A stretch of 64,000 bases of DNA from Heteronotia binoei (lineage: Eukaryota): contig NC_083227.1 of NCBI RefSeq assembly GCF_032191835.1, positions 39,928,001 through 39,992,000 of the forward strand. Reading direction: 5' to 3'. The notes beneath the pieces were generated by a model. That model ran no database searches. It had not been told where the DNA came from and worked only from the letters and a program-made list of their open reading frames with translations. How positions within the stretch are numbered: the stretch's first letter is position 1; every line of letters starts with the position of its first letter. Below are positions 33,681 through 57,410 of the stretch, piece after piece. A program made the position numbers and the translations under genes.

Positions 33681-33861
33681 ATTATATTTATATTTATATT
33701 GTATAAATATTTATATTGTATAATATATATGAGAGACTATGTATGGTCCAAAATCATCCTCATGTCAATTGTGATTTGAATCTGGGATTCAATGTCTGTT
33801 CTTCACACCTGTATAGTCTTTGTTGCTTGCTATTCATTATCTTTCATGACTTTTATAGACG

Positions 33862-34815
33862 ATGAACAGTGATGCATTATGGAAACACCATAACCAAAGC
33901 TACCAAGGAGAATTCATCTTACTGGGAGTGGCTGACCACCCTCGTTTGGAGATGGTGCTCTTTGCCATCATCCTGATGTGCTACACGATGACCCTCCTCG
34001 GCAATACCATCATCATTACCTTGTCCCATCTGGATCCACATCTCCACACCCCCATGTATTTCTTCCTTAGCAACCTCTCCTTTCTAGACATCTGTTACAC
34101 AACAAGTATTGGGCCCCAGATGCTGGTGAATTTCTGGGGGAAAAGAAAGACCATTACCTATGTTGGCTGTGCAGTCCAGCTGTTTGCCTCCCTTGCCCTG
34201 GGTGCAACAGAGTGTATTCTGTTGGCAGTCATGGCATATGACCGTTATGCTGCAGTCTGCCAGCCTCTGCATTACACCGTCATTATGAGCCACTCCACAT
34301 GTCTCAAAATGGCTGCCGTTTCCTGGTTGAGTGGCTTTGGTAATTCCCTAGTGACAACAGCAATGACTTTTATGCTTCCACTGTGTGGACAGAACAGCGT
34401 GGACCATTTTTTCTGTGAAGTATCGGCTTTGCTCAAACTGGCTTGTGTGGATACGTCAGTTAATGAGGCTGAGCTGTTTACTGTTAGTGTAGTCTTCCTT
34501 TTAGTGCCACTTGGGCTCATCATAGCCTCATATGGCTACATCACAGTAGCCATGCTGAAGATCCGCTCAGCTGAAGGCAGGCGCAAAGCTTTCAATACCT
34601 GTGCCTCCCACTTGACTGTGGTGTCACTTTTCTATGGGTCAGCAATTTTTAGTTATCTCCAGCCTCCTTCTAACTATTCACGTGACCAAGGCAAGATGAT
34701 TTCCCTGTTTTATACCATGGTGGCTCCAATGCTCAACCCATTAATCTACACACTGAGGAACAAAGAGGTCCACCGAGCTCTAAAAAGAGCAATGGGCAGG
34801 GTACAAATAGCTTAG
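33862..34815 (+). CDS. Olfactory receptor OR-1, class II, OR2-like, intact
   Basis: 317-aa ORF with [47 protein letters not shown] and [15 protein letters not shown]; NQS sequon; AATAAA ~45 nt after the stop. Confidence 0.97.
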
Positions 34816-34884
34816 CCCAGTAATTCTGGATTTCATTTCTAGAGGACCAGTAGTATCACTTAATAAATCAATTACAATTAAAAA

Positions 34885-35020
34885 CATAAGAGGCCTTGTT
34901 CGATCAGGCCAATGGCCCAACCAGTCCAACACTCTGTCACAAAGTGGCCAAAAAAACCCAGGTGCCATCAGCAGGTCCATCAATGGGGCCTGGAGACTAG
35001 AAGCCCTCCCACTGCTGCTC
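34885..35020 (-). mobile_element. CR1 3' UTR fragment (left half; continues at 38231-38375)
   Basis: aacataagaggccttgttcgatcaggccaatggcccaaccagtccaacactctg...; split by the Gypsy insertion. Confidence 0.7.
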
Positions 35021-38000
35021 TGTTGTGTATGTGTCGGGCTCATTGAAGCCATACCGACTGAGCTTGGGGACTTGGGAACAAAGGGCTGCAGGATCCAAAT
35101 CTCTGCATCCCTAGACCAATCACAAGCCCCCACCGGTTTGAATGACCCAATGATGTGCTAGCGCAGGAATCCAGAGATGTATATGTTGGGCCAGAAGGCC
35201 CCCATCCCCAGTCTTGTAATGTAGCCCTATCCTATATCAAGTCTATTAAAGAGCTGGTGATCACTCAGCTGGCGACTCCTCCATGCATAGAACTCACTAT
35301 ATTATAGTGGCAATGAGTTTGGGATTCGGATGAGTGAGGCCCAGGACCAACTGGCATCGCCAAACGTGCAGAGCTCCAGTGCTACCACGGAACAGGCACC
35401 ACCACCTGGCCTGACCATGGCCACCACGTCCAGATCACAAAACTCCATTCCAGAGTTCGACATAGCACAGGCCAAGGCCTGGGAAGCCTGGGTCAAAAGA
35501 CTCAAGTATCACCTTGTGGCGCAATGAATCAAGGACGACGAACTAGAAATCAAAAAGGCCATCCTGCTGAGCAACTGCGGGATCGCAATCTTACAACTCG
35601 TGGAGGGCCTGGTTGCACCAGGGATGCTCAAAGCATCTTCCTTCAACGAGATCATCAAGGCACTGACTGGCCATTTCGTCTGAAGCCTACCCACCTCACC
35701 TGGTGGCTACAGTTCCTCGACAGATTCCAGGAACCAAATGAGATAGCTGCAACCTTCCTAGCCCGCCTGCGGGACATGGGAAGGAAGGCGGACTACGGCG
35801 CACAACTTGAAGAAGCCCTGATCGCAAAGTTCACTCATGGCCTCCAGGACTCAAAGGCATGTAGGAAAATTGCTATGGAGGATGATCCCACCCTGGCGAA
35901 GGACCTACAGATAGCCACTGCTGCCAAGGATGTGAGTAAGGAGAAGGCCTGCTGCCCGAGCATCAGTGCTCACCAGCTGTGACCGGCCACAGAGTCGGAA
36001 GACTCCAACGGGGACAACGCCCTGAAGCTGCACCAGGCAACTCAACAAAAGCCACAAGCACGGGTGACAGAAACAACCACCCCCAAGACCTGCTCCAGCT
36101 GCGGGGAGCCGCACAAGTGATGCACTTGCAGGTTCCAGAGCACAACCTGCCACACGTGTGGAAAGGCCGGGCATCTGGCCTGGGTCTGCTGATTGTAGGC
36201 GCAGTGGCAAGGCAAACCTCCATGCCAACAAGATGGCCGCTGCCACAAAGTTGCACTCGTGAACGACATCCAGGCACTCTCCATGAAGGGGACCCAGGTA
36301 TGCCAACTGCCCCTTTCATCCCCCGATATGTACCACGTGACTGTGTTCATTGATGGCAAGCCCTGCAAAATGGAAGTAGACTCGGGGGCGGGCCAGACGG
36401 TCATTTCAGCCTGCACATTTATGGGGTTATGCCTAGGGGGAGAGGCCCAACTACAACCATCCCCATTCATAGTCCACGATTTTCAAAAGTGGGAGGTTGC
36501 AATTCTGGGAGTGCCTGGTCCAGGTTACATATGGGAGGTTCAAGGGCAAGCTTTCCCTAATCGTAGCAGAAGGTGACCCGAGTTCTGGACTGGGTGTGGA
36601 GGGGGTGACCGGAAGGCAGGGTGAGTTCGGAATTCTTGTTATTTGCATCCCACAGGGACGAACTGTGCATAAAGGGTGTCTGTTGTGGGGAAGTAGGGTG
36701 GTGGTGTTCTGGTACTGCGGCAGCGAGTCCTAACAGCCCTGCACGAGACCCACCCGGGAATTGAGCGCATGAAGGCGCTAGCCCGCAGCTATGTGTGATG
36801 GCCCAGGATAGACAAAGCAATTGAATCCTGGGTGGCCAGATGTCAGCCATGCCAGGAGATCCGACCAGCGCTGGCCCACGCCCCAGCACAACATTGGGAG
36901 TCCACTCACAACCCTGGTCCCGTTTGCACCTCAGTTTTGCAGGGCCATTCCAGGGGCAGGTATTCTTCATTATTGTGGACCCCTACTCTAAGTGGATGGA
37001 GATAGTTCCAGTAGCATCCACATCCATGCGGGCAGTGCTAGGGGCCTTCCGCAGGGTTTTCGCCACACATGGCCTCCCGGATTCATTGGTATCGGATAAT
37101 GGGACAGCTTTCACCTTGGCTGAGTTCCAGGATTTCTGTGGCTGGAACTTAATAAAGCACATACGGTCAGCCCCTTTTCATCCCACCACCAATGGCCAAG
37201 AAGAGAGGATGGTGCGGGTTACGAAGGAAACGCTCCGCCGCATCATACATGGAGAGTGGGAAACCCGCTTAGCTGAGTGCCAGCACCGTCACCGGCCACA
37301 GCCCAGCCGAGCTGCTCATGGGTTGGCAGCTGACTACCCTTCTTGACCACATGCACCCAGACTGAGCTCCCGACCTACAAGCGGTGCCAGATGTGGTCTA
37401 GGAGCCCTGGGGGTTTGACACAGGGGACTTAGTGTTTGCTAAAAACTTTGGGGGTGGGCCAGCATGGATACTAGCACGGGTTTCCAGAGTATTGGGTGCC
37501 ATCATGTACAAGGTTACATCCGAGGGGGGAGGGATCATGATGAGGCGGCACATCGACCAATTACGGGCACGCGAGTCGCCTGGAGGGGAGGGGGACAAGA
37601 GCATCACAAATCTGACAGCCACGCCAGACACCGCATCGTATGAGCCGGAGGAAGCAGAAAGACCAGCAGCAACACCCCTGCTGGCACTCGAGACAGCAGA
37701 GCAGCCAGGACTACCACAAAACAAGAGACCGCGGTGAACCCAGCTCCACCAGCCGAGATCCTATCTGTGCCAAGCCCTATGCCCAGGGCACCAGAAGCTG
37801 CCGCCACATCCCTGCCCACACCAGCTCTCAGACAGTCGACACGAGAGCATTGCAAGCCTGCATACCTAAAAGGCTATGTCCACTAGGGGGCTTGCGAACT
37901 AAGGGGGGAGGGATGTTATGTATGTGGACTCAAGTGACGACTTTGGGTGTGCCTGCCAGGCTCATTGGAGCCATATGGACTGAGCTTGGGGACTTGGGAA

Positions 38001-38230
38001 CAAAGGGCTGCAGGATCCAAATCTCTGCGGTCCTAGACCTATCACAAGCCCCCACTGGTTTGAATGATCCAATGATGTGCCAGCACGGAAATCCAGAGAT
38101 GTATATCAGTTGGGCCAGTAGGCCCCCATCCCCAGTCTTGTAATATAGCCCTATCCTATATCATGTCTATTAAAGAGCTTGTGATCACTCAACTGGCGAC
38201 TCCTCCATGTATAGAAACCACTATATTATA
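35021..38230 (+). mobile_element. Gypsy (Mag-like) LTR retrotransposon, internally deleted and decayed
   Basis: LTRs 35021-35306 and 37914-38230; PBS-like tggcaatgag after the 5' LTR; PPT aaggggggaggga; TSD tgctc/cgctc; gag CCHC knuckles, protease EVDSGA, integrase HPGIERMKALARSYV and VSDNGTAFT; stops and frameshifts throughout. Confidence 0.92.
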
Positions 38231-39169
38231 CGCTCCCCCCCCCCCGTAAGCACCAAGAATAAAGGGTACCATGTGCCCTAGACGGAGAGTTCCATCTACA
38301 CCATGTGCCCTAGATAGAGAGTTCCATCTATATAATTGATGGACCTCTGCTTCATATATTTATCCAATCCCCTCTTATTTATACCTCACGTTCCCAAATT
38401 CATCACTCAAACCAGTTTACATCAAAATTCTCTAAAATAAATTCAGTAATCAGCAAGCATCATGTATGAACCAGAAAGCACCACACTAATAAAAACATAG
38501 GTCAGTCATAGCTACAGTAAGGAAACAGAACAAAATTAATCAAACCAAACCTGGAAAAACATAACCAGAAGAAGAGTTATATGAATAAAAGCCCAACCGT
38601 GATGGCAATTCTGAGGATTTTCATTCATTAGATTTGGCTTGCACAGGATTGGCTCACACTGTCTCTGCTATGCCATTGGCTGATTCTGCTCTCCCCTGCC
38701 CACTGACAGCCCCATCAGGCAAGAACCCCAGCAGAAGGCTACTGTCCTTCGACAGAGACAGTTCTCTGCTGACAGGAAGCTGACAGGAAGCTTACTGAGC
38801 AGGACTGCTTCTCCTCAGACCCTGTTGTAGGAAATCCAGGACAGTTCGTCTGAGAGTAGGCAAGGAGGTGTGAGGGTGTAAAACGGGAAATATTTGTGGT
38901 GCCTGGCCCCTAACCCGCTCCCACCCAGCTACGGGCCTGTGTTCATGAGAAAACAGTAGGGTTCCTTCTCTTCAACTGAGGCAAAAGGAATGTTCATTCA
39001 CAGCAGGGAGGGGCCCTTTCCAGCTGCCAATACTCTTCACTCTTTCTATTCCAGTTAGGCTACAATGGGCTCATATGACAGAATGGACTCTGAGGGAGAG
39101 GCTTTTCCTCCTGGAGAACCACTGCTGCCATTCTTCAGGTGAGCAAAATCAAAAAAATACCGAGACCAA

Positions 39170-41630
39170 ATAATGAATACAAATAACTCTATTCTTATAA
39201 ATAACTTGTTATATAAATATTTCTACATCACATCATTGGCGTTAGTAATACATGACTCAAAACAACCACTGAGCACAAGACAAATTTCTCAAAGCAAACA
39301 CTTATACAATAAAGTGCTGAGTGCAAAAAGGTGCTTGTATAATAATAATTTTAGAAAGTTCATTCCCAGAAGACTCCATAGGTCTACCTCCTATGGAGCC
39401 TGAAGCCGGCTGACACTTGCCACGCCATTTCAATTTCTTTGTCAAAGAGGAGAATGTGAAGTTCTTCCAAAATTGCTATATAAAATGCAACATTAATGCA
39501 CATATTACAGTTATAATAAACTCCATAGTCTTTCAAATTTTCAGTATGCACAAACTTGAATTAACTCACCAATAAATAAATTATTCAGAAGCACATACAA
39601 GCACACTCAGCTCCTTTCAAGGGTGTTTTACCGCAGCTGTCTCTAAGCCATGAGCTCAGTATTTAAAGATACAGTACTCAATTTATAAATTATACACAGC
39701 TGTTCCTCAGAATATTCTCAAAAGCTAGGAAACCACCTAAATACCCCAATGTACATGCTTTAAACAGAAACAACATAATTAATTTATTACTGTTTACAAA
39801 AAAACCAGGAAAAATCAATATTGTTGTTTGAACCATTGGGTGCAAGTGATTTTAAACAAAAAATCCAGAATGTTTCTTCCCTCAATAAACATTTCTTAGC
39901 AAACTCATTGTGAGGATCTTTGTGTTTGTATAATACAATAAATTGCATATCATCAATATGATGATTAGCCTCCAAAAAATGAATTGTGAGGGGGACTTTT
40001 AAATTTTTCATTTTAATTCTTGAGCAGTGTTCTGTCAGTTGAACACAAATGGGATGGGTTGTGTTTCCCACATAAATCCTGCCACAGCCACACTGGATGG
40101 CGTACACGACAAAGGAGGAGTTGCAATTACTAAAATGATGTAATGTAATAGTTAATCCAGTTCTAGGAGGTGTAAAAACCTTGGTTTGCAAAGCTAAATT
40201 ACACAGCTGAGTTTCCGCACCTGTAATGTCCCTGTGGACCAATAGGTGGCATCAAAGTTTTAGGCATATCTGAATGCACTAACGTATTTCTGAACGCTGT
40301 AGTGCAAACAGAGGATTCAAACACCCAGGTACCTCCGATAATAAATGCCAATGTCGATCCACAGTTTTCCGAATTGCTAAAGCATTCAGAGTATAATCCA
40401 AAGTATAAAAAATATTGTCACGTTTCACTCTAGTTGGCAGTTTTAGCAACGACCCCCTATCCATCGAATCTGCTTTTCTAGCAGCTCTAGCAACAATATT
40501 TCCTAGAAAACCCCTTTGCAAAAAATTGTTACTTAAAAGATTACAATGTTCCTTATAGTCTACTTCCTTTGTGGCATTCCTTTTTAATCTCAGAAATTGT
40601 GAATAAGGTAAATTGGTTTTTAAATGCTGCGGATGAAATGAAGAATAAAACAAATATGAAACCCGGTCTGTGTCCTTGGAATAAGGTTTAACCACAACTG
40701 TATGCTGTTCACTTTGGTACACAGTCATGTCTAAAAAAGGGACCAAATTTAAATCAGATATTCCCGTAAATTTGATAGTTGTGTGTATGTCATTCAGCCA
40801 GCTCAAAAAAGGTGTCATTCCGGAATTATCTCGTAAAATTATGAACAGATCATCAATATACTGATAATAGGTAATGAGGATTGGTCTGCTCATTACAAAT
40901 CCAATCCTCTTCCAATTTTGCCATAAAAAGGTTAGCTATGCTTGGAGCCATACTTGAGCCCATTGAAATACCTCCAATCTGGTAGAAAAAATCTTCCTGA
41001 AATCTAAATTTTTTTTTTTCAAAAACTATATCAATAAATTGTAACAGAAAAAAAGTAGGGGGATTATGGTTTGAGCATTTCTCAAGCACAGCTTCTAAAA
41101 CCAAACGTGCTTCCTCCAGCAGAATGTTGGTATACAAGGAGGAAACATCAAAAGTACACAACACAGCATTCTCAGGTAACAATTTGCCTTCTAATTTTTT
41201 TATGAAGTTGCAACTATTCCTAATATAGGATGGTATTTCTAAGAAAATGGTTGCAGAAATGAGTCCACAAACTTAGAAAGGGGTTCTAAAAGAGAATTGG
41301 ACCCCAACACAATAGGTCAGCCCGGGGACGGGAACCCTGGCTTAGGAATTTCAGGTAAACAATATAACACTGGAGTTCTGGGATTTTTATTTAATAAAAA
41401 CGCCTTTGTTTTTTCATCAATGATATATAAAACTTCAGCTTCCGTAAGAGTCACCTGGAGGTGATTTTAAAGACATGTTCAGACGGGTCTTCCCGTATTT
41501 GTTTGTAGATGTCAGAATCTGCCAGCTGTCCTCTTATTTCCCCTATATAGTCATTAATATCCTGTACCACTATTGCCCCTCCCTTGTCAGCAGGTTTGAT
41601 AGTGATTTTCTTGGAGCTTCCGGGGATCGG
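39170..41630 (-). mobile_element. Penelope-like element, RT plus GIY-YIG endonuclease and 3' end (Neptune-like)
   Basis: ITIKPADKGG, FDVSSLYTNI, GISMGSSMAPSIANLFM, YIDDLF, SSFHP, and VVYAIQCGCGRIYVG...H...E...WI endonuclease; frameshifted. Confidence 0.92.
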
Positions 41631-44600
41631 AAATGGTGAGCTGAAGTGCCTTCCTTAATGAGGGCAGGCTGGCACATCTGTTCAGGGTAGTAAAAGGCAA
41701 ATCAATGCCTTCTGCCTACTTTTCTCAGTCAGAGAAAAGTCCAAGACTAGCATAGAAGTTTTTAGAAGATTTACCTTGGCTGAAAAAGAGTCCTGGAGAG
41801 GGTTCTTTTGAAGCTTTGAGGGGTCTTCAGTGATAAGCTGCTTTTCCAAGCGTCTGCAGAAGTGTCCAGAGTCATTTATTTGGCATAAGCTTGGCAGGAT
41901 CCAAACCCTCTTTGACAACTATAAACATCTAAACTTCAAAAGGCTGGTGCGGATCAGAGTAAGCTACAAAATGAAGGTACTGATCACTATCTATTCACTC
42001 CAGAGCTAATTAAAGCTGATTAAAAGGAAGAAAAAGGTGGGAGTTGTAAAGACTGTAAGTTTAAAAGGAGTAGAACAGAAGGGGTGAAATGTGAACTTTG
42101 TAAAACTGGAAGAGAGAGTGGAAATGAGAAAGGAATTTTTTGTTTAGTCTATCGGTGGTCACTGAAGCTGTGCCAGATCCATGGAGCTGCAAAACACCCA
42201 ATTATCACAGGAAGTACATCAGACATCATGAGAACTTCTTACCAGTGAAACAGGAGTTGGTGGCCAGATAAGCAGGAAGTATTGGAGGAAGAAGAAGGGA
42301 ACTATAGACTCTTTTTAAAAGCCTACTTTAGGATTTAATGCCATAAAGAAACATCGGTGGACATTGCTGGGAGGACTAAATTTCAATTAAGTTTTTAAAG
42401 TGATAGGAGCATTACAAATAGTAGGAACTGGTGGAGTGGACATTCTAAAACATTGCAAGTTAGACTGGCAGAGAGAGCTGGAAATACTCAAAGGAGAAGA
42501 AGTAATTTTTTAAAGGGAAGTAAAAGTCACAATTGTCTTTTTGGGAAGAATAAAAATTTTAAAAATTAATATCTGAGCCTGGGAGGCTTGTAGAATGGTG
42601 AAACTGGGCTTATAGAGCACACTCTATTGTATTGAGTTTGATGGTTCAGGAGTAAATTGGGGCGGTAAAAAAAATTTTTTGAGTTTTTTTTCATGTCAGA
42701 GCCAAGATTAACAGGTGCTGCTTCAACAGAGAAAATGCAGGCTCAGTTAGAGGCGATGGAAGCCAGGATAATGAAGGTGATTAATGCTTCTAAAAAAGAA
42801 ATAAGGAAAGATATTGAGGACTCTAAACAAGAATTAAAAAAAAGAAATGGAGAGTATTAGAAATGAGACTGTGGCAATAACAAAAACTGTGCATGACGTT
42901 GAGGAGAAAGTGAAAATACATGATTCCACCTTGCTAAAACTACAAGAAAAGGTGATTATGCATGACTGCAGATTGATGGAGACACAGATTCATTTGAGAG
43001 GTGTACCTGAAGATGAAGAAAATGACCTAAAAGGATATATAATAAGAATAATTGCAGAATTCTTGGAGGAGGATCCCAAAGAAAATAGAAATATGTATGA
43101 CTCTATGTATAGAGTAAATTCACTCTATGCAAAAAAGAATCTGCCAAGAGATGTGGTTATAAGGTTCAATACAAGAGAAATGGTGGGGAGGATTTTGAAT
43201 AAAAGTTATCGGAAAAATTTGATTGTAGGAGGTAGCAGAGTCAGACAGATGAAAGAACTACCAAGACAAGTTCTGACTGCAAGGGAGGAATACAAAAAAT
43301 TAACAGAAAAACTGCGTGACAAGGGAATGAGATATAAATGGATAATACCTGAAGGCTTGAGCTCTGAACTTCAAGGGAAAAGATTCACAATTACAAGTAC
43401 AGAAGAACTGCATAAATTTTGTAGAGAGAATAAGGAATTTGCACCATGATGGATTATAAATTGATTTCTTGGAATGTAAAGGGACTAAATTCACCACAAA
43501 AAAGAAGGGCAACGTTTCATTGGCTTAAAAAACAAAATTGTAACATAGTTTGTTTACAAGAAGTGCATATTAGACAAAAGGATTACAAATTTTATGGAAT
43601 AAACAATTGGGACTAGAATTTTGTGCATTGGCTGAGCAGAAGAGAAGTGTAATTTTTTTATATTAAACAAGAATTAGAACCGAAATTGGTATTTAAAGAC
43701 AAAGATGGAAGATATATAGCGGTGGAAATTACATTGAACACTAAAAAAACTTTATTGTTAGGAATATATGCTCCAAATGGGGCTAAAGACATTTTTTAAA
43801 AACATATTTTACAACATCTTGATGAAGTGACCTATGAGCAAATATTGATGATGGGGGATGATGGGGGACTTTAATGGAACAATCCAGAACTCATTAGATA
43901 GATCTCGGAAGAAGAACAACAATAAAGAAGGAAAATTGCCAAAATCGTTTTTTGAACTGATAAAACAAGAAAACTTAGAAGATATATGGAGGAAGTTCAA
44001 TCCAGTTGTAAGAGACTATACCTTCTTTTCTGCAAGACATAATACTTTTTCCAGAATTGATATCATATGGGGCACTAAAGACTTAAGCCTTATAACAAAG
44101 AAAATAGAGATCTTGCCGAAGGTAGGTGCAGATCACAACCCAATATTGTGGATTACAAAACTGTCTAGAAAACTAAGAAGATGGAGATTAAATGAAGACT
44201 TACTACAAAATAAAGAGACAGTGACATCTCTGGAAAATGAAACTAAAGCTTTCTTTCAAATAAATGATAAGGGTGATATAGCTTTCCAGACTGTGTGGGA
44301 TACGTACAAAGCTGTAATGAGAGGGATACTGATTACATTAAATAATAAGGATAAAAAACAAGAAGAAAAGCAGATGTTGGACATTCAAAATGAAATAAAG
44401 AAAAAAGAAGGGGAACTGAGGAAAGACCAGGGAAAAAGAAAATTATAAGAGAGATTGCAATATTACAAGCACAAATGAGACATCTGTTAAACAAGGAGTT
44501 GGAATGGAATTTGAAAAAACTACAACAGAAATCCTTTGAAGGTGCGAATAAACCTGGAAAATTTTTAGCTTGGCAACTGAAGAAAAAGAGAGAAAGTAAA

Positions 44601-45891
44601 ATAATTAATAAAATCGTAGTGGAAGGAGGAGATAAAGTAGATCAAGAAGGAATAGAGAGAATTTTTCAAATCTTATGCCAAACTATTTAAGGGTGTGAAT
44701 GTAGATAAAGGAAAGTTGGAAGCATATTTGCAAAAGGTCAAAATTGCACCCTTAACGGAATACATGAAGAAAATTTTGAATGATCCAATTGAACAGATAG
44801 AAATAGAGGCAGCGATTAATGCAATGAAAATTGGGAAAGCACCGGGGCCAGATGGATATATAGCAAAAAAATTTAAAACCTTTAAAATAGAATTAGTACC
44901 GAGACTTCAAAATATGATGACTATGATAAGAACGGAAGGGAAAATACCAAATACATGGAAGGAAGCTGTGATTTCGTTGATTCCTAAAGAAGACAGAGAT
45001 GTCACGAATGTAAAGAATTATAGACCAATTTCATTACTAAATAATGATTATAAGATATATACAAGAATTTTAGCAGAAAGACAGATTAACTTTATAAAAG
45101 AAGACCAAACAGGATTTCTCCCTAAAAGGCAAATTAGAGACAATATTAGAACTGTTGTAAATGTTGTAGAATATTATGAGAGATGTCCAGAGAAAGAAGT
45201 TGCATTATTCTTTGTGGATGCAGAGAAAGCCTTTGATAATTTGAACTGGGACTTTATGTTTGCAGTAATGGAGAAAATAAAATTAGGGGAAGACTTCATA
45301 AGAATGATAAAAGCAATATATACTGAGCAACATGCGAGATTATGTGTAAATGCAGATCTTACAGATGAAATGACAATTAGCAAAGGTAGAAGACAAGGGT
45401 GTCCGTTGTCGCCATTGCTGTTTATAATGACTCTTGAAATTCTTTTGATGCAAATACAAGATGATAAAAAGATAGAAGGACTGAGAATTAAAGGACTTTC
45501 TTATAAATACAGAGCATTTGCAGATGATATTATGTTTATAAATGAAAATCCTTTGCAAGTAACACCTTTGTTGCTAGATAAAATACAAGAATATGGAGAA
45601 CTGGCGGGACTTTATATTAATAAAGAGAAATCAAAGCTTCTATGTAAAAATATGCCAGTGAACAAACAAAAGGAGCTGCAGAAATTAACTGGATGTGAAA
45701 TAACCCATAAAGTAAAATATTTGGGGGTAGAAATTACAATGAAAAATATTGATCTGTTCAAAAACAATTATGAGAAGCTGTGGCGTAAAATGGATGAGGA
45801 CATGATAAAATGGAATAAACTTAATTTGTCATTGCTTGGAAGAATAGCTGCAATTAAGATGAATATTTTGCCGAGAATAAAGTACTTGTTT

Positions 45892-47065
45892 ATTTATTTA
45901 TTATTTATTACTTTGCATTTATATCCCGCCCTCTCCGCAAGCGGACTCAGGGCGGCTTACAGTATCATAAAAACAATCATTCCATAAAACATATAAAACC
46001 ATAATACATTTATCAGGTTAAAACTATTACGCTATCTCGATCCAGTCTGGCGGTATTGGGTTCAGACTATGACCACCAGCTTCTGTAGGATGTCCGGTGG
46101 CAGCTCATTTTCAGTCAACCAGAAATGCCTGTCTAAACAGTTCGGTCTTACAGGCCCTGCGGAACACCGACAGATCCCGCAGGGCCCTTATAGCTTCTGG
46201 GAGGGTGTTCCAGAGTTCTGGTGCTGCCACCGAGAAGGCCCTAGATCTTGTTGCGCATAGTCTGGCTTCTTTTGGGCCAGGGGCAGACAGCAGATTTTTT
46301 GTCCCTGATCGCAGTGCTCTCTGGGGGATATATGGGGAAAGGCGGTCCCGTAGATAGGCAGGTCCCTGACCATAAAGGGCTTTAAAGGTTAATACCAACA
46401 CCTTGAAGCGAACTCGGAACACAACAGGCAACCAGTGCAGCTCTCTCAGCACTGGCTGAATGTGCCCCCATCGTGGTAGCCCCATTAACAGCCGTGCCGC
46501 AGCGTTCTGCACTAGTTGTAGTCTCCGGGTTAGCGTCAGGGGTAGCCCCATGTAGAGAGCATTACAGTGATCTATTCTTGAGGTGACCGTAGCATGGATT
46601 ACCGTCGCTAGGTCGCTGCGGTCCAGGTAAGGGGCCAGCTGCCGTGCTTGCCGAAGATGGAAAAAGGCAGATCTAACAGTGGCTGCCACCTGAGCCTCCA
46701 TTGTAAGGGAGGACTCAAGGAGCACGCCTAAGCTCTTGACCTTGGGGACCGGTATTAGTGGCACCCCGTCAAGGGCCGGCAGCTGGATCTCTCTCCCCGG
46801 ACCGCCCCGACCCAGGTAGAGAACCTCCGTCTTCGTCGGATTCAATTTCAGCCGACTCAGTCTGAGCCAAGAGGCCACGGCTTGTAATGCCAGGCCTAGA
46901 TTTTCCAGGGTACAGTCAGACTGGCCACCCATCATTAGGTAGAGCTGGGTGTCATCCGCATATTGATGGCAACCCAGTCCATACCTCCTGACAATCTGGG
47001 CAAGGGGGCGCATATAGATATTAAATAACATCAGGGATAGGACCGCTCCCTGCGGCACCCCGCAA
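45892..47065 (-). mobile_element. Young 5'-truncated L2 LINE inserted in L1 ORF2
   Basis: 315-aa open frame (PQGAVLS, HQYADDTQLY, LQLVQNAAARLL, LHWLPV); AT-rich tail; TSD ttgttt (45886-45891, 47066-47071); the L1 frame resumes LPRIKYLF|QTIP. Confidence 0.93.
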
Positions 47066-48482
47066 TTGTTTCAAACTATTCCGATTGTGAAGGATAGTAA
47101 ACAATTTAGTAAATGGCAAAGGAAGATTTCTGAATTTGTATGGGCTGGGAAGAAACCAAGGATCAAAATGAAAGTACTAACGGATGCTAAAGAAAGAGGT
47201 GGTTTTCAACTACCAGACTTAAGACTGTATCATGATGCAGTTTGCTTAGTGTGGATAAAAGATTGGATGACGCTTTTGAATAAAAAACTTATAACGTTGG
47301 AAAGTTATGGAAATAAATTTGGCTGGCACGCGTATATGTATTATGAGAAGAAAAAGTTGGTCTTTTTTCTTACCGTTACATAAGGAACAATTTGTTAAAT
47401 ACTTGAGTGAAATATAAGAGATATGGTGATGAAAGAAAGCCATTATGGATAGTACCAGCAGAAGTGATAAAAAATAACAGTTGAGACGGATGAAGGAAAG
47501 CGGCTGTCGTACAATCAACTATTGAAAATACAAAGTGGCAAAATAGAATTAAAAACTGCTGAAGAGCTGAATAACAAATACGATTGGTTCCAGATGCAGC
47601 AAATAAAAAGTTTGGTGGAAAATGATATCAAAACTGTAGGAATTAGACAAGAACGAACTGAAATGGAGAACGTCTTGCTTGGAGATAATGAAAAATTAAC
47701 CTCAAAAGTATATAAATTATTGTTAAAATGGTCTACAGAAGATGAAGTAGTGAAGTCTCAAATGATTAAATAGGCAGTTAATGTAAATAGAGAAATATAG
47801 ATGGATACTTGGGAATATTTAGGGAAAAACTCTATGAAAATTTCAACATGTCAGAGTATAAAAGAAAATTGTTACAAGATGATGTACAAGTGGTATATGA
47901 CTACTAAAAATTGGCAAAGATGAACAATAAGATGTCAGATAGATGTTGGAAATGTAAAAAACATGAAGGTTCTTTTTACCATATGTGGTGGACTTGTGAA
48001 AGAACAAAACAGTATTGGCAGATGATTCAACAAGAAATTTCTAGGATCTTGGGGTATGAATTCAAGAAAGTGCCAGAGATCTTTCTCTTGGGATTACAAA
48101 TGGAAAAGTTTCCAAAAGAAGATAGAACTATAATATGGTATATGCTCTCAGCTGCTAGGACATTGTATGCGCAGTTGTGGAAGCAAGAAAAAATACCAGA
48201 AAAATGGGATTAGATAGTTAAAGTTATGACATGGAGTGAAATGGACAAATTAACAAGAACTTTAAGAGACTATGATTTGGAGGTTTTAAGATGGAGTGGA
48301 AAAAATTTAGAAGATATGCAGAAAAAGTAAAAGGACATTGGACAATTTTTGATAATGATTAAGTCTTAGAAGAAAGAAGAATATTAATTTTTGGTTTTAG
48401 TAGTTAAGTGTATCTTTAAATGTTAGTAGTTTTTGATAATGATTAAGATTAAGTTTTAGAAGAAGACAGAGTATAAATATTG

Positions 48483-49385: not shown

Positions 49386-49389
49386 TGAT

Positions 49390-50535: not shown

Positions 50536-51004
50536 ACACCCACAAAAGTTTATGCTGGAATAAAATCCTTCTTTCTGTTTAAAAAGATACCACCAGAGTT
50601 TTGTTTTGTTTTTAAACACCTGAAACTTAACCTGTGTGCATAACGATAAGACTGACAAGCACCCATTAAATCAAGCAGCTATCACTTTGGGGCAGAAGAT
50701 CACTTTTAGACAGAATTTGAAGTTGCTTTCCTAGTGAAAATGTGCTTGGTTCAAAAGCCCCACCATGACAAATGAACTTACGTACTTCTGTATTTAATAG
50801 TTTCAAGACTTGATAGCACCAGTTCTTTCTGTGCTATCTTTTTTCATTCTTTGTAGCTATTGCCATAAAATAGTAGCTGTTAACAGTTTTGTCATGATTC
50901 CATATTCTGTTATTAACTGTAGCCTTGAAACAAGGGAGTGCCTCATAATTATTAATTGTTGGAGGATATTCAGAGAGGTGGTTGAATAGAACTGAATAGA
51001 CCTT

Positions 51005-51120
51005 CCCAACCTTGTTATTCCAAGGAGGTCTCCCACCCAAATACTTGCTAGAGTTGGCCCTGCTCAGCTTCTTAAATCTGGCAAGATCAGGCTTGCCTGG
51101 GCTATTCAAGTCAGGGGGCA
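51005..51120 (-). mobile_element. 5S-derived SINE remnant
   Basis: ggaggtctcccacccaaatacttgctagagttggccctgctcagcttc...gcaagatcagg, a diverged reverse complement of 5S rRNA. Confidence 0.5.
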
Positions 51121-51239
51121 ATTTCAAGTTTTGTCCTTTTCATTTCCCCCGCAATTCAACTGTTTTTGAGAATTGATTGGGGGGGGAGGTACCAGAAGTT
51201 AGTCTTGCCTAGGGCACCAGATAGTCTAGGGCCGCCCTG

Positions 51240-51440
51240 ATAGCTCTCACAGGAGTTGTCCTTGAAAGGGCAGCTGCTGTGAGAGCTCTCTCAGCCCTAC
51301 CTACCTCACAGGGTGTCTGTTGTGGGTGGGGGGGAGGAGGTAAAGGAGATTGTGACCGCTCTGAGACTCTGAGATTCAGAGTATAGGGCGGGATATGAAT
51401 CCAATATGATCATCATCATCATCAATCATCAACATCATCT
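51240..51440 (+). mobile_element. Squam3-type SINE 3' part with (CAT)n tail
   Basis: gctctctcagccctacctacctcacagggtgtctgttgtggg...gggcgggatatgaatcc followed by a cat/ctt microsatellite. Confidence 0.7.
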
Positions 51441-52439
51441 TCTTCGTCTTCTTCTTCTGTCACAGCTCTCCTTTTTCCCTTGTAAAGGTTAAGTGCTCCC
51501 TCTCCCCACTTCCTTCACTGATGAAAATCATTCCTGCAAATCATCCTCTTCTGACTCTGTGGAGGGTCTTGGGAGCTTGTTACAGGCTCCGCAGTGTAAT
51601 ATGTAGTTGGTCTCTCATGACATCATTTCAGTTCTGGTTCCTTGGGGTTCCATCTTAGTTCTCCAGACAATTTTGTTGTGACATTCAGGCAGTGGTGGAC
51701 ACCAACAACAGCCTCATCATCCAAGATCTTGCTCATAAAAGCTGCTATTCAGGTTTTCCTGCCTTCCACAAAGCTCTTTGGGGTTATGTGCTGGTTAAAC
51801 TGTCCAGCAATCTCTGAAGTATCACTTGCAAGAGACAGTCTGTGATGTGAGTCAAAATTGTGAAGATGCTGGACTGAAGCAAACAATACAATAAAAAGAA
51901 GAATTGCAGGGAAAACAGACTGATGCCTCCTTCTATTCCCTTAGTCTGCAGTGTGTCGGTCTCCCAAATTCTGCTTCTTTCTATCCATCTTTTCTCTGTT
52001 TCTTAACCCTGCTCCCTTCCACTTGCTGTCCCCTGTTCAGCCTTTTGCCTACCAACCAGATGCATAAGATTTCTCTCTGTGTTATCTTTCTTTCCTTGAA
52101 GAATATCAACATGTGAAGCTTAGAGTTTTATTTCTTTTGTGTGTGTGTGTGTGAGGCTACTGCCCTGTGCATGCTCATACTTAATGAGCCTCTGATCAAA
52201 CATTCCTAGAAGTGTGCTGTACACCAGATTTCTCTCTAGTAGAATACTTTTCTAATTGTGTTCTTCTCTCAGCCTTCTTCTCATATTAATCTCATGCCTT
52301 TGTCTCTCTCCCCCCAGTCTGCATCTTTCCCCATCTGTATGCTTCTCTTGACACTTGCTTTCTGGGGAATGTCTCTCTTTTCCATCACATCTCCTTCCAG
52401 CTGCAATTCCACTCAGATCTCAACTGGCCAGACCTTCCC

Positions 52440-52567
52440 TGATCACAAGTGGCACATCCACAGACGTCTCTGAGCTCTTTCTAGCATGGATTCATCAGAG
52501 ATGCTCTTCATCAGTGCATGAGAAGACTTGGAGGAAGAAAAACTGCCTGATTCTAAGCAAACCAGAG
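52440..52567 (+). other. Putative 5' (apparently non-coding) exon of OR-2
   Basis: Homologous to 30880-31002 (ttcttcatcagcaaatg / ctcttcatcagtgcatg; ccagag|gtgag donor). 5' boundary unknown. Confidence 0.5.
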
Positions 52568-53439
52568 GTGAGGTTGGGGAGTGGAGGCACTAGAGAAAAG
52601 TAAGGGGCTCTAAAGTCTAGAACAAATATCTGTGAAATGATGGAGAAAGCAGCAATCTATAATTTATTTGACAGGCATTTTTCAGACATTGGGAAACAGC
52701 ACTTGCCTTGCTTCAAAAGGGTTCTCTTTTCTTTCTGAACTTTCCAGATTCAACAGGAGTCTCGTGGCACTTCATAGATGAACATAATGTATTCCAGCAT
52801 TAAACCTCAGTTCTCCTGCTGTATTTGTTTGCAATCCTGGAACAGAGGCAGCGTTTTATGGGGAGGGTTATTAAAATCCCTTCCACTGCTTCCCCATTTC
52901 CTCCAGAAGCTATTAAAAAAAAAAGAAAAGCAAATCAAAACTCCTCACCTTTAACTTCTCAGCATGGGATTACTTTTACCCATGTTTGTGAACAAAAAGA
53001 ATAATCTTTGTGTCTAAATGAAAACAGTCCAGCCATTTTAGACTTTTCTTAAATGGGAGATGCTGCAGCCCCTTGAACATTTTATTCCTAGGTGTTGAGT
53101 TCTGTTGTTCTCTTAGATCTACCTTCTTCATCAGAATGCAGAATGTTACACACAATCATGAATTTCTACAATGGCATAGGGTAATTCCTTGGGTTTTTTT
53201 TAATTCACTCAAGCTAATTCCTAAGGTTAAATTTACCTTTTTCTAATATGTGCTTGCCCCACCCCTATGTCTTTTTAAAATAATAATTGATAGTTGTTTC
53301 TTCTATTTAGATATTTGTTACCTTAATTTCTCCCCATTGGGGACCAAAGCATCTTACAACATCATTCTCTCATCCTCCATTTTATCCACAATACAACAAC
53401 TCTGTAATACATGTATGTGTGAGTTAAGTGCTGTCATGT

Positions 53440-54960
53440 TGCTTCCAATTTATGGTGACCCTGTAAATTAATAACCTCCCACTGTCCTATTAGCCTTGCT
53501 CAGGTCTTGCAAACTGCAAGCCATCGTTTCCTTTATTAATCTATCTCATGTTGGGTCTTCCTCTTTTCCTGTTGCCTTCCAGTTTTCCTAGCATTATTGT
53601 CATTTCCTGTGACTCATCTTCTCATAATGTGACCAAATTATGATAGCCTTAGTTTATTCCTTTTAGTTTCAAGGAACAGTTCAGCCTTCCTTTGATCTAG
53701 AACCCAGTTATTCATCTTTTTGGCAGACCACAATATCTGTAAAACTCTCCTCCAACACCACAATCAACTTTTGTCCTGTCGGCTTTCTTCACTGTCCAAC
53801 TTATGCACATATGAACACATGAAGCTGCCTTATACTGAATCAGACCCTCGGTCCATCAAAGTCAGTATTGTCTACTCAGACTGGCACTGGCTCTCCAGGG
53901 TCACAAGCTGAGGTTTTTCATGCCTACCTGCCTGGACCCTTTTTAGTTGGAGATGCCGGGAATTGAACCTGGGACCTTCTGCTTACCAAGCAAATGCTCC
54001 ACCACTGAGCCACCGTCCCTCCCCAAATAATAATTCATGTATAGTAATAAATTATTATCTTCATCTTGGCTGACAGCAACACATCCTTAGTCTTAAGAAT
54101 CTTTTCTAGCTCCTTCATGGCTGAACTTTGCTGTGAGATGTTGAGTATTGATTTACTTGCATGAGAAATGAATGTAATGGTCAGATAGTTGATGCAGTCT
54201 TTGACATCTCTTTTTTTCAGAATTGGGATGCAGATTGTTTCTGGTCTGTTGGCCACTGTCCCCCCCCTCAATATTTATTGGAATATTCTTGTTCAGATGC
54301 TGATGGGCTCTGTTTCTGAGGCTTGAAAAAAAATGCTATTGATGATTCATCTACTCCTGGTGATTTGTTTCTCACAATTGCTCTCAGTGAAGTTGTACTG
54401 GTGCTTTCATTTCACTTTCTAAAACTGTAGATCATCTTCAAAAGATTCTTCTTGGAAGGAATGTCATCCTTTCATCTCTTTTGTATAGCTCTTCAGTGTA
54501 TTGTTCTCATATTTTCTTTATTTTGTTAATGCTTTACCATGTTGATCTTTCAGCATACCTAATAATGATTTACCGTAAATTTCCCTTTGATTTCTTGGAT
54601 CTTGTGGAACAGAACTCTTGTTCTTCCTTTTTTGTTGTTCTATTTCTTTACAGTGGTTATTATAATAGTTTTCTTTGTCTTTACTCACATGTCTCTGGAA
54701 CTCTGCACTGCCTCAGTCCTTAGAAATTTTAAGAGCTTCATCTGTCATCCACTGAGGTTTTTCATTCCTTTTAACTACAAGAAGAGTCTTGTGCGTTCTT
54801 CATTGTTGATATCTCTGGTTTTAGCCCCTAGTTCTTCCAATTTGCATTCACTCAGATTTAGTAATACAAAATCTGTTCTTTACATGGTCTTTTAACACTT
54901 CAGGAATGATGTTAAGATTGTATTAAGGCACAATGAATGTTTTGGAGTTTTTCTCCACCT
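53440..54960 (-). mobile_element. Degraded RTE-BovB LINE fragments
   Basis: RTE-type 3' end (ccctgtaaatt...ttgctcaggtcttgcaaact) and RT remnant IPILKKRDVKDCINYLTITFISHASK; interrupted by a SINE. Confidence 0.7.
53812..54025 (-). mobile_element. tRNA-derived SINE with CR1-like tail
   Basis: gggaattgaacctgggacc (B-box complement) and gaacacatgaagctgccttatactgaatcagaccc tail. Confidence 0.7.
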
Positions 54961-55104
54961 TAAAGGTGAAACAAATTAGCATCTGTAGTGAGATATGCAT
55001 CCTATATCCCTATTCAGTCCTGGGAGGTCCATTGCTCTGAATTTATGGATGAACTCAGGTTCAGCAATCTCACATTATAGGCTCAGGGGTCCCCAGTCCT
55101 ACTT

Positions 55105-55221
55105 GTATCTGATGAAGGGAGCTTGGAAGCTCAAAAGCTTGTAGCCTGGAAATTTTGTTGATCTTTAAGATGCTACTGGACTCAACTTTTGCTCTTCTAC
55201 TGCAGACCAACATGGCTATCC
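55105..55221 (+). mobile_element. Penelope pLTR-derived short element with degenerate hammerhead motif
   Basis: ctgatgaagggagcttggaagctcaaaagctt...ctgcagaccaacatggctatc; same family as 58818-58945. Confidence 0.55.
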
Positions 55222-55410
55222 CCAGTGTTCCCTCTAAGCTGAGTTAGTGTGAGCTAGCTCACATTTTGTTAGCCTCCAGTTCACACATTTTTGTCTTAGC
55301 TCAGGAATAGTGGCTCCAGAACAAACTAATTTATACAGTAGCTCATAACTTTAATGCCAGTGGCTCACGAAGCAGAATTTTTGCTCACAAGATTCCACAG
55401 CTTAGAGAGA
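55222..55410. mobile_element. MITE-like element (family of 1003-1190)
   Basis: cagtgttccctctaagctgagttagtgtgagc ... cagcttagagagagaattgctg. Confidence 0.6.
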
Positions 55411-56474
55411 GAATTGCTGCCCACCTGAACCTATATAAGCACAGTGCCTCCTCTTTGCTTGTTGTTCTCTTTTGGGTTGCTCCTGATAGGCACAGGGGGC
55501 AGATTATTTGCTTGCATTTCTTGGCAAAACAAACAAACAAGCAAACAAAATTGCTTTGCATTATCTTAAGTTTTCTACACTCATTTTCTACACTATTGTA
55601 ATTCATGGTACTTTCCATGTCTGTGAGCTGCCCTGAGCCTGCCTTGGCGGGGAGGGCGGGATATAAATAAAAATTATTATTATTATTTTCTTGAATTGTC
55701 ACCGAAAGCAGTTTCACCCCGGAGTTGCTCCTCACTTCACAAGAGTACTTTTGAACAGGGATTTTCTGCAGGTGGATTCAATGCTCATAAAAAATCTGAA
55801 TCAACCCTGAGTGTAGAAACAGCCTTAGTACAGGGTCTACTGTAAGCTCCAGAAGGATTGGCCACATCAGGGGTGTGTGGCCTAATATGCAAAGGAGTTT
55901 CTGCTACAAAAAAAAGCCCTGAAATTTGCGCCAATTTCCCGGTGTGAGAGCGCTCATCTTGGCAATTAATTTTAAAATTCTTAGTGTATAATAGCAGTAG
56001 TAATTACAAACATTTTAACAAAACTTCAACAAGCCCTCAGGCAGTACATTGGGGAAATCTGGCCATGGCCCTGTGAAAATCCAACTGCACTGTCCTACAC
56101 TCTTAAGATGGAATACAGTGTAACAACCTGATGAAAAGCATCAATGGTAGATGAACAAACGAACAATTCATCAAAAAATATTCTTTTTCTCAAATCTGAG
56201 CCCAACTGGCAAGTGTTTGAGCATTCCTAACTAATATTTAGACAAAAATCTATAAATAATATTTTGATAGGCTGTGCCCTACGTAGGGTGTGGACATACA
56301 TTTTGGAGGCTTAGACTCAAATCACAATTCACTGGGTGATCACAGAAATAACTGACTTTAATTCTCCCTGATACTGCTTTGGTGTGAGTAGTTCACAACA
56401 GCTTCCTTTCCTGATTCATTGCCTGTTATTCATTATTCCTGACTTTTACAGATGATGATGAACAGTGATGCATC

Positions 56475-57410
56475 ATGGAAACACTAAACCAAAGCTACCA
56501 AGGAGAGTTCATCTTATTGGGAGTGGCTGACCGCCCTCACTTGGAGAAGTTGCTCTCTGCAATTGTTCTGATCTGCTACGTGATGACCTTGCTTGGAAAC
56601 ACAATAATCATTGTGGTATCACAGCTGGATCCTTCTCTCCACACCCCCATGTATTTCTTCCTCACCAACCTCTCCTTTCTAGACCTCTGTTACACAACGA
56701 GCCTTGGTCCCCACATGCTAGTGAATTTCTGGAGAAAACGAAAGACCATTAAGTATGCTGCTTGTGCAGTCCAGCTTTATGTCTCTCTTAGTCTGGGCTC
56801 AACAGAGTGTCTTCTATTGGCATCCATGGCTTATGACCGCTATGCAGCAGTCTGCCAGCCTCTGCGCTACACTGTCATTATGAGCCATTCTGTATGTTTC
56901 AAAATGGCCACTGTCTCCTGGGTGATTGGTTTCAGCCACTCATTAGTGCAGACAATAATGACTCTGAAGCTCCCATTTTGTGGAAACAACAGGATAGACC
57001 ATTTTTTCTGTGAAGTACCAGCACTGCTGAGATTGGCATGTGTTGACATCTCGGTCAACGAGGCTGTTCTCTCGGCTTCCTGCATAGTCATCCTTCTGCT
57101 CCCTTTGGGCCTTATCATAGTTTCATATGGTTACATCACAGTTGCTGTCTTGAGGATCCGCTCAGCCGAAGGCAGGCACAAGGCATTCAGCACCTGTGCT
57201 TCCCACTTGACTGTGGTGTCTCTCTTTTATGGCTCAGCCATTTTTAGCTATCTCCAACCTCCTTCTAACTACTCCCACGACCAAGGCAAAATGATGTCCC
57301 TGTTCTATACCGTGGTTGCTCCAATGCTTAACCCTTTAATCTATACGCTGAGGAACAAAGATGTCCACAGAGCTCTAAGAAGACTAATGCACAGGGAACC
57401 AACCCTGTAG
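56475..57410 (+). CDS. Olfactory receptor OR-2, class II, OR2-like, intact ORF
   Basis: 311-aa ORF METLNQSY...; [56 protein letters not shown]; close paralog of OR-1; AATAAA at ~57457. Confidence 0.95.
   Translation: METLNQSYQGEFILLGVADRPHLEKLLSAIVLICYVMTLLGNTIIIVVSQLDPSLHTPMYFFLTNLSFLDLCYTTSLGPHMLVNFWRKRKTIKYAACAVQLYVSLSLGSTECLLLASMAYDRYAAVCQPLRYTVIMSHSVCFKMATVSWVIGFSHSLVQTIMTLKLPFCGNNRIDHFFCEVPALLRLACVDISVNEAVLSASCIVILLLPLGLIIVSYGYITVAVLRIRSAEGRHKAFSTCASHLTVVSLFYGSAIFSYLQPPSNYSHDQGKMMSLFYTVVAPMLNPLIYTLRNKDVHRALRRLMHREPTL

What the first reader, a model, noticed from the sequence alone, without database searches (positions are those of the whole stretch)
33859..56487. Sister ORs use opposite reading-frame starts because of a 1-nt indel
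Seen: both exons begin with homologous atgaacagtgatgcat[t/c]ATGgaaacac. In OR-1 the canonical-looking ATG (33879) reads METP-stop (TAA 33891) and the receptor is in frame only with the upstream ATG (33862). In OR-2, one base shorter, the inner ATG (56475) is in frame (METLNQS, Asn5 sequon) while the upstream ATGs read MMMNSDASWKH-stop (56452-56487). Inference: either OR-1 suffered a +1 frameshift rescued by upstream ATGs and exon recruitment, or OR-2 lost the long form. This is a neat case of N-terminal frameshift compensation that annotation pipelines would miss.
Basis: partly seen in the sequence, partly recalled or inferred. Interest (0 to 1): 0.7.

Follow-up and report, generated by a model that had tools for sequence, protein, structure and literature searches.

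The report
Gecko smell-receptor start codon shift
Two neighbouring gecko smell-receptor genes start in different reading frames because the second lost one base soon after its old start and now begins at a nearby spare ATG; this is a tidy but ordinary piece of gene evolution that public annotation of a related genome already captures.

Summary
OR-1 (33862-34815, 317 aa) is in frame only with the upstream ATG. OR-2 (56475-57410, 311 aa) is one base shorter and in frame only with the inner ATG. Its upstream ATGs read MMMNSDASWKH-stop.

The polarity is now resolved. The long N-terminus (M.SDASWKHLNQS...) is the ancestral state of this OR2G3/2B8-like clade in geckos, other lizards, snakes and turtles. 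The Gekko japonicus ortholog of OR-2 still has it. So OR-1 is unchanged. OR-2 lost one base (CACCTT to CAC-TA) in the Heteronotia lineage. A latent ATG inside the old Ser-Trp codons (TCA TGG) came into frame. The old start codons now form an 11-codon overlapping upstream ORF.

The same state occurs in a second Heteronotia binoei assembly that differs by 3-5% in the flanks, so a random sequencing error is unlikely. NCBI already annotates both starts there (311 and 317 aa).

OR-2 stays strongly constrained (dN/dS about 0.07 against Gekko). The two genes are not sisters; they are old tandem paralogs.

No RNA data were found.

This is a neat, ordinary case. The scan holds notes on other receptor start changes elsewhere in this genome, but none on this mechanism.

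The parts
33847..33858 (+). Conserved TGACTTTTATAG: a branch-point-like motif, a short pyrimidine run and AG, taken as the 3' splice acceptor of the OR-1 coding exon
   Evidence: TGACTTTTAYAG is invariant across 8 gecko paralogs and orthologs, including Eublepharis, while sequence further upstream decays (alignment A3). Its use as an acceptor is inferred; there is no RNA.
33862..34815 (+). OR-1 coding sequence, 317 aa, ancestral long N-terminus [13 protein letters not shown] (Asn11 sequon)
   Evidence: ORF. 7tm_4 at 175 bits. 97% identical to H. binoei P0003, which has the same start.
33879..33893 (+). Out-of-frame inner ATG in OR-1 (METP-TAA), embedded in the Leu-Trp codons TTA TGG
   Evidence: It is homologous to the ATG that OR-2 now uses.
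56440..56451 (+). Conserved TGACTTTTACAG, the presumed 3' splice acceptor of the OR-2 coding exon
   Evidence: Alignment A3. The 90 nt upstream are 88% identical to the Gekko ortholog.
56452..56487 (+). Relic of the ancestral N-terminus: ATGATGATG then NSDASWKH then TAA. It is now an 11-codon upstream ORF that overlaps the new start
   Evidence: Its peptide matches the start of Gekko P0012 and P0016, MNSDASWKH(L)NQS. It has one more ATG than Gekko.
56466..56468 (+). TGA in the receptor frame, two codons before ATG 56475
   Evidence: frame 56454: DDEQ*CIMETLNQS. It rules out an N-terminal extension from an upstream exon through this acceptor.
56468..56530 (+). Second upstream ATG, in the third frame; a 20-codon ORF (MHHGNTKPKLPRRVHLIGSG)
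   Evidence: frame 56453.
56484..56486 (+). Site of the 1-nt deletion. Ancestral CAC CTT AAC became CAC-TA AAC, with a T>A change beside it
   Evidence: Alignment A3. Gekko P0016, P0012 and P0007 and Eublepharis P0008 all have the extra base. The H. binoei assembly shares the deletion.
56475..57410 (+). OR-2 coding sequence, 311 aa, derived short N-terminus METLNQS (Asn5 sequon). Its ATG lies inside the former Ser-Trp codons TCA TGG, with A at -3 and G at +4
   Evidence: ORF. 7tm_4 at 196 bits. 98% identical to H. binoei P0033 and to Gekko P0016 over the last 242 aa. dN/dS 0.07 against Gekko.

Best explanation
OR-1 and OR-2 are two old tandem paralogs of one class II olfactory receptor clade, named 'OR2G3-like / 2B8-like' by NCBI. 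The ancestral gene began right after a conserved splice acceptor, with ATG(ATG) AAC AGT GAT GCA TCA TGG AAR CAC CTT AAC CAA AGC (M N S D A S W K H L N Q S). OR-1 keeps this layout.

In the Heteronotia lineage, after its split from Gekko, OR-2 lost one base in CAC CTT. That threw the old start out of frame. An ATG already sat in the +2 frame inside the Ser-Trp codons (TCA TGG), in good context (A at -3, G at +4). The deletion, 7-10 nt downstream, brought this ATG into frame with the receptor.

The result replaces MNSDASWKHL with METL and keeps the NQS glycosylation sequon, now at Asn5 rather than Asn11. The rest of the receptor is untouched.

Shown:
- the indel and its polarity;
- its presence in two diverged genomes;
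- strong purifying selection on OR-2.

Inferred:
- the mRNA begins upstream of the relic ATGs;
- the receptor is made from ATG 56475 by leaky scanning past four upstream AUGs;
- the relic therefore acts as an overlapping upstream ORF that lowers, but does not abolish, translation.
For: Polarity:
- Of 85 annotated relatives, 71 have the sequon Asn at residue 9 or later, with the mode at 11. Long forms occur in Gekko, Eublepharis, Paroedura, Sphaerodactylus, lacertids, snakes and turtles.
- The tree puts OR-2 with H. binoei P0033 and then Gekko P0016 (317 aa, long form) at 100/99 support. OR-1 goes with P0003 and then Gekko P0007 and Euleptes P0014.
- In the DNA alignment every outgroup has 13 bases where OR-2 has 12. 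OR-1 differs from Gekko there only by CTT>CAT.
- Synteny holds. OR-1 and OR-2 lie 22.6 kb apart in the window, 22.4 kb apart in Gekko on one scaffold in the same orientation, and 29.7 kb apart in H. binoei.

Reality of the indel:
- The H. binoei assembly GCA_032191835.1 has the same state at both genes, yet differs from the window by 2.9% (OR-2 flanks) and 5.4% (OR-1 flanks).
- The site is not a long homopolymer.

Function:
- OR-2 against Gekko gives dS 0.26, dN 0.019, ratio 0.07.
- Polarised changes: Heteronotia stem 21 synonymous to 5 nonsynonymous; window tip 3 to 1.
- Coding divergence between the two Heteronotia genomes is 0.96%, against 2.9% in the flanks.
- All receptor motifs are intact.

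Upstream ORFs are normal in receptor mRNAs: 67% of mouse Olfr mRNAs (PMC4627058), and 54.6% of human and 86.1% of mouse genes (PMC7055050).
Against:
- Three of the four upstream AUGs have a purine at -3, and the relic ORF ends after the main AUG. Ordinary reinitiation therefore cannot reach the main AUG, and receptor output could be very low.
- The age of the deletion within the Heteronotia stem is unknown, so most of the measured constraint may predate it.
- The H. binoei reference copy has 4 nonsynonymous to 1 synonymous private changes. OR-1 shows a similarly raised recent ratio (0.42 against 0.39).
- If the window and GCA_032191835.1 are two haplotypes of one animal, they share a read set, although not the same molecules.
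Confidence: 0.8

Rival explanations
1. OR-2 is a young or hypomorphic pseudogene. The deletion destroyed the real start. The intact-looking 311-codon ORF exists only because a chance ATG lies in frame. The four upstream AUGs capture the ribosomes, so little or no receptor is made.
For: - Four upstream ATGs, three with a purine at -3, and an overlapping ORF that ends 10 nt after the main ATG.
- The relic is unchanged relative to Gekko P0012, so the deletion could be recent.
- Recent changes between the two Heteronotia copies are 4 synonymous to 5 nonsynonymous. This is a higher nonsynonymous share than on the deeper branches (Fisher p = 0.016).
Against: - The window lineage shows 24 synonymous to 6 nonsynonymous changes since Gekko.
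- Coding divergence is a third of flank divergence.
- OR-1, which has no lesion, shows the same recent ratio (0.42). The rise therefore looks like the usual excess of mildly harmful young variants.
- Upstream ORFs are the rule in working receptor genes.
- The main ATG has the best context of the five.
Confidence: 0.15
2. The missing base is an assembly or sequencing error, and OR-2 really has the long form. Adding any base before TA restores MMMNSDASWKH(L/I/V)NQS.
For: - The sequence is exactly one base away from an intact long form, with no other lesion in the relic.
- Reads could not be inspected.
Against: - The same 12-base state stands in a second assembly that differs at about 3% of flanking sites.
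- The context AAACACTAAACC has no long homopolymer.
- NCBI's model for that assembly uses the inner ATG and carries no low-quality flag in its name.
Confidence: 0.04
3. One reading: OR-1 gained a base (a +1 frameshift) and was rescued by upstream ATGs and a recruited exon.
For: Only the pairwise comparison of OR-1 and OR-2, which cannot give a direction.
Against: - OR-1 has the same length as all outgroups at the site, and its start is the homologue of theirs.
- The long form is the norm across sauropsids.
Confidence: 0.01
4. OR-2 is translated efficiently because the mature mRNA lacks the relic ATGs. This could come from use of the second AG (gaacag at 56459-56464) as acceptor, or from a transcription start inside the exon.
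For: A second AG lies 13 nt downstream of the conserved one, and using it would remove ATGATGATG.
Against: - The conserved pyrimidine run and AG lie at 56440-56451 in all relatives.
- The ATG at 56468 would still remain.
- There is no RNA to test this.
Confidence: 0.1

Closest known systems
Vertebrate class II olfactory receptors, OR family 2 (named OR2G3-like / OR2B8-like by NCBI in reptiles)
   Same: - 7tm_4 domain.
- The [20 protein letters not shown] and [12 protein letters not shown] motifs.
- A single coding exon of about 940 nt behind a 5' UTR intron.
- An N-terminal NxS sequon.
- Tandem clusters with retroelement debris between the genes.
   Different: Nothing in kind. This reptile clade has an unusually long tail before the sequon (Asn11). 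OR-2 has reverted to the short tail (Asn5) that I recall as typical of most receptors.
Upstream ORFs and upstream AUGs in olfactory receptor mRNAs (Shum et al. 2015, PMC4627058; Barnes et al. 2020, PMC7055050)
   Same: One or more AUGs ahead of the receptor's start; these are common in working receptor genes and are thought to lower translation.
   Different: - Here the upstream ORF is not in a 5' UTR exon. It is the fossil of the gene's own former coding start.
- It overlaps the new start, so reinitiation cannot serve.
[quoted passage not shown] 2020)
   Same: The extracellular N-terminal tail is the part of the receptor that changes: through a new start codon, an extra exon or alternative isoforms.
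   Different: - OR-2 cannot be extended from an upstream exon, because TGA at 56466-56468 is in frame.
- The change is a frameshift plus a latent ATG, not splicing.
Start-codon turnover after a frameshift, rescued by a downstream out-of-frame ATG (general gene evolution)
   Same: An early frameshift is tolerated because a nearby ATG restores the frame and the lost residues are dispensable.
   Different: No specific difference. This is a clean, polarised example with a dated bracket: after the Gekko split and before the two Heteronotia genomes diverged.

Membership tests
Olfactory receptor (Pfam 7tm_4, class II) | Match to PF13853 above the curated cut-off | tested here: met
   OR-1 scores 175.4 bits and OR-2 195.9 bits against a cut-off of 27.
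Olfactory receptor (Pfam 7tm_4, class II) | Hallmark motifs (MAYDRY, KAFSTCxSHL, PMLNPxIY) and an N-terminal NxS sequon | tested here: met
   Read in the translations. NQS is at residues 11-13 in OR-1 and 5-7 in OR-2.
Olfactory receptor (Pfam 7tm_4, class II) | Uninterrupted coding exon of about 0.93-0.95 kb | tested here: met
   ORFs of 954 and 936 nt. These are the only two receptor matches in the window.
Olfactory receptor (Pfam 7tm_4, class II) | Expression in olfactory sensory neurons | not testable with these tools
   No RNA run holds the stretch.
Overlapping upstream ORF acting on the main start | An upstream AUG out of frame with the main ORF, ending downstream of the main AUG | tested here: met
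   The ORF at 56452-56487 ends 10 nt after A of ATG 56475.
Overlapping upstream ORF acting on the main start | The upstream AUGs are present in the mature mRNA | not testable with these tools
   Depends on use of the conserved acceptor at 56451/56452, and there is no RNA.
Overlapping upstream ORF acting on the main start | A measurable effect on translation of the main ORF | not testable with these tools
   Needs reporter assays or ribosome profiling.
Split-coding-exon olfactory receptor (Barnes et al. 2020) | Open frame from the acceptor into the receptor, so that an upstream exon can supply the start | tested here: not met
   For OR-2, TGA at 56466-56468 is in frame. For OR-1 the frame is open (ACG before the ATG), but no upstream exon was tested here.

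The most novel reading that the evidence does not exclude
The frameshift turned the gene's own former start into a regulatory overlapping upstream ORF, kept intact and even lengthened by one ATG. This ORF sets a lower receptor dose for an otherwise very strongly conserved receptor. That would be a traceable birth of a translational control element from coding sequence.
Probability: 0.12. Interest if true: 0.4.

Novelty: new member of a known kind. Interest (0 to 1): 0.2.

Why it matters
It gives a clean, polarised example of how an early frameshift in a receptor gene can be harmless. The outer tail before the glycosylation site is dispensable, and a latent ATG inside conserved Ser-Trp codons stands ready to take over.

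For people who count intact and broken receptor genes it has two practical lessons:
- A receptor whose 'normal' start is out of frame need not be a pseudogene.
- Several 'short' annotated relatives are only spliced gene models laid over an intact long form.

It does not change what is known about olfactory receptors.

Tried and rejected
- Read-level check: the look-up of sequencing runs on window:56200-57500 gave only runs holding 8% or less of the words, from many organisms, and no RNA run.
  - The second protein search used only window:56682-57407, beside them.
  - Closed local scripts for codon comparisons and a local match against the window file still read the whole stored sequence.
- Search for OR-2 orthologs nearer than Gekko, to date the deletion: none in the collection. 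The Euleptes ortholog P0019 (309 aa, a different short start) has no DNA on record.
- Recurrence of the same mechanism: two other 'short' relatives, Hemicordylus P0020 and Python P0056, turned out to be spliced gene models. Their main exon still encodes the intact long form, so they are not parallel frameshifts.
- Read-through of the old start by programmed frameshifting: a -1 shift would be needed, and there is no slippery heptamer at AAACACTAA (read by eye). Rejected.
- Conserved upstream exon: local blastn of 6 kb upstream against 3 kb of Gekko found about 250 nt of alignable sequence before OR-2 and only 36 nt before OR-1. This was not informative about 5' exons.
Full report
**What is in the sequence**

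The window holds exactly two olfactory receptor genes, both on the + strand.
- OR-1 is the ORF 33862-34815 (317 aa).
- OR-2 is the ORF 56475-57410 (311 aa).
- Both match Pfam 7tm_4 far above the cut-off.
- They are 79% identical over 303 residues without a gap.
- The 22.6 kb between them is retroelement debris, with reverse transcriptase and integrase fragments.

**Check of the observation**

- In OR-1, ATG 33862 is in frame with the receptor. The inner ATG 33879 reads METP and stops at TAA 33891-33893.
- In OR-2, the three upstream ATGs from 56452 read MMMNSDASWKH and stop at TAA 56485-56487. ATG 56475 reads METLNQS and runs on for 311 codons.
- The DNA alignment of the two genes has a single one-base gap just after the inner ATG, and no other indel in the coding region.

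**Which state is ancestral**

- A protein search with OR-1 found near-identical proteins in Heteronotia binoei. P0003 has 317 aa, is 97% identical and has the same [13 protein letters not shown] start. P0033 has 311 aa and starts METLNQS.
- The N-termini of the other hits show that the long tail is the rule in this clade. Examples are MNSDASWKHLNQS in Gekko, MKSDASWEHFNQS in Eublepharis, MYREASWEEGNQS in lacertids, MNRETSWEESNQS in pythons and MSGKGAWEDGNQS in turtles.
- Of 85 annotated relatives, 71 have the sequon Asn at residue 9 or later, with the mode at 11.
- Two of the 13 'short' ones that I looked at in DNA are spliced gene models. Their main exon still encodes the long form.

**Orthology**

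- A maximum-likelihood tree places OR-2 with H. binoei P0033, then Gekko japonicus P0016 (317 aa, long form), then Euleptes P0019. Support is 98-100%.
- OR-1 groups with P0003 and then with Gekko P0007 and Euleptes P0014.
- The genes are therefore old paralogs, not sisters. dS between them is 0.75.
- In Gekko the two orthologs lie on one scaffold, 22.4 kb apart and in the same orientation.
- In the H. binoei assembly they lie 29.7 kb apart.

**The event**

- In the alignment of the 5' ends (A3), Gekko P0016, P0012 and P0007 read TGG AAR CAC CTT AAC CAA AGC. Eublepharis reads CAC TTT AAC.
- OR-1 reads CAC CAT AAC: the same length, with one substitution.
- OR-2 reads CAC-TA AAC: one base fewer, with a T>A change beside the gap.
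- The T>A change is silent in both frames (CTT to CTA) and creates the TAA that ends the old frame.
- The ATG that OR-2 now uses is present in all the long forms as part of TCA TGG (Ser-Trp), with A at -3 and G at +4. It was therefore a latent start.
- OR-2 has also gained one more ATG at the old start (ATGATGATG against ATGATG).
- The motif TGACTTTTAYAG just before the old start is invariant in all eight sequences. I take it as the splice acceptor of the coding exon; this is an inference from conservation and from the usual structure of receptor genes.

**Is the indel real?**

- The H. binoei assembly GCA_032191835.1 has the same state at both genes.
- It differs from the window at 18 of 954 and 9 of 936 coding sites, and at 5.4% and 2.9% of flanking sites.
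The window may therefore be another lineage or haplotype of that species complex.
- Either way the two sequences come from different molecules, and the site is not a long homopolymer.
- Reads could not be inspected.

**Is OR-2 still a working gene?**

- Against its Gekko ortholog it has dS 0.26, dN 0.019 and a ratio of 0.07. OR-1 has a ratio of 0.22 against its own Gekko ortholog.
- With Eublepharis and Gekko paralogs as outgroups, synonymous to nonsynonymous counts are as follows:

| Branch | Synonymous | Nonsynonymous |
|---|---|---|
| Gekko branch | 19 | 2 |
| Heteronotia stem | 21 | 5 |
| Window tip | 3 | 1 |
| H. binoei reference tip | 1 | 4 |

- The recent ratio between the two Heteronotia copies is 0.39. 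It is 0.42 for OR-1, which has no lesion. I therefore read the rise as the usual excess of young, mildly harmful variants.
- The date of the deletion within the stem is unknown, so constraint after the event is not proven.

**Translation**

- In the receptor frame there is a TGA two codons before ATG 56475. No upstream exon can extend OR-2, and 56475 is the first possible start.
- If the exon begins at 56452, a scanning ribosome meets three in-frame AUGs of the relic ORF (two with A at -3). It then meets a fourth AUG in the third frame (56468, G at -3, a 20-codon ORF) before it reaches the main AUG.
- The relic ORF ends after the main AUG, so the receptor must be made by leaky scanning.
- This is not unusual for the family. 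Upstream ORFs are reported in 67% of mouse Olfr mRNAs (PMC4627058), and in 54.6% of human and 86.1% of mouse receptor genes (PMC7055050).

**Comparison with what is known, and verdict**

- Both genes are ordinary members of the class II receptor family.
- Variable N-terminal tails, upstream AUGs and alternative starts are documented for receptors.
- What is specific here is the route: a frameshift in the dispensable tail, rescue by a latent ATG, and the old start left behind as an overlapping upstream ORF.
- Public annotation already gives both starts for H. binoei.
- The finding is correct and its direction is now resolved, but it is a neat example rather than a new kind of thing.
- Other notes of this scan describe different start-codon changes in receptors elsewhere in this genome. 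None describes this mechanism.

Noticed in passing
window 30958-31008: ATG followed by 14 more codons (MGKDLEKHSYLCKPE) ending at a consensus donor GAG|GTGAGT, in phase 0. If spliced to the OR-1 acceptor at 33858/33859 it would read in frame through ACG into ATG 33862. This is the scan's separate note s1-335957. It was not joined or searched here. The 3 kb upstream of the Gekko ortholog shows no match to it, and the fetched H. binoei locus does not reach it.
   Followed up: partly
L008 (Hemicordylus capensis) 7560-7600; L009 (Python bivittatus) 720-760: The annotated short proteins P0020 (MWLSNQS) and P0056 (MKIGSNQS) are two-exon gene models that splice an upstream exon onto an AG inside the coding exon. 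The main exon itself still encodes an intact long form behind the usual acceptor: MYSEASWEGGNQS in Hemicordylus and MNGKTSWEESNQS in Python. Each is either an alternative isoform or a model artefact.
   Followed up: partly
window 56475-57410 against L003 (Gekko japonicus): OR-2 is unusually conserved for an olfactory receptor. It is 98% identical to its Gekko ortholog over the last 242 aa, with dN/dS 0.07. Its neighbour OR-1 evolves about five times faster at the protein level (dN 0.108 against 0.019).
   Followed up: partly
window 33859-33864, L004 2998-3006, window 56452-56460: The tandem ATG ATG at the ancestral start turns over between copies. OR-1 has ACG ATG, Gekko P0007 has ATG ATC, Gekko P0016 has ATG ATG and Heteronotia OR-2 has ATG ATG ATG.
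   Followed up: yes
window 35500-47100, also 18579-19673 and 62799-63371: The space between and around the two receptors is filled with retroelement remains. There are RVT_1 fragments on both strands (18582-19673 -, 44695-45984 +, 46114-47058 -) and an integrase core fragment (36840-37343 +).
   Followed up: partly
L001 (H. binoei OR-2 ortholog), codons 86, 106, 200, 203: The H. binoei reference copy carries four private nonsynonymous changes (W86R, S106G, S200L, C203S) against one synonymous change. The window copy has 1 against 3. This is a possible sign of relaxed constraint on that allele.
   Followed up: no
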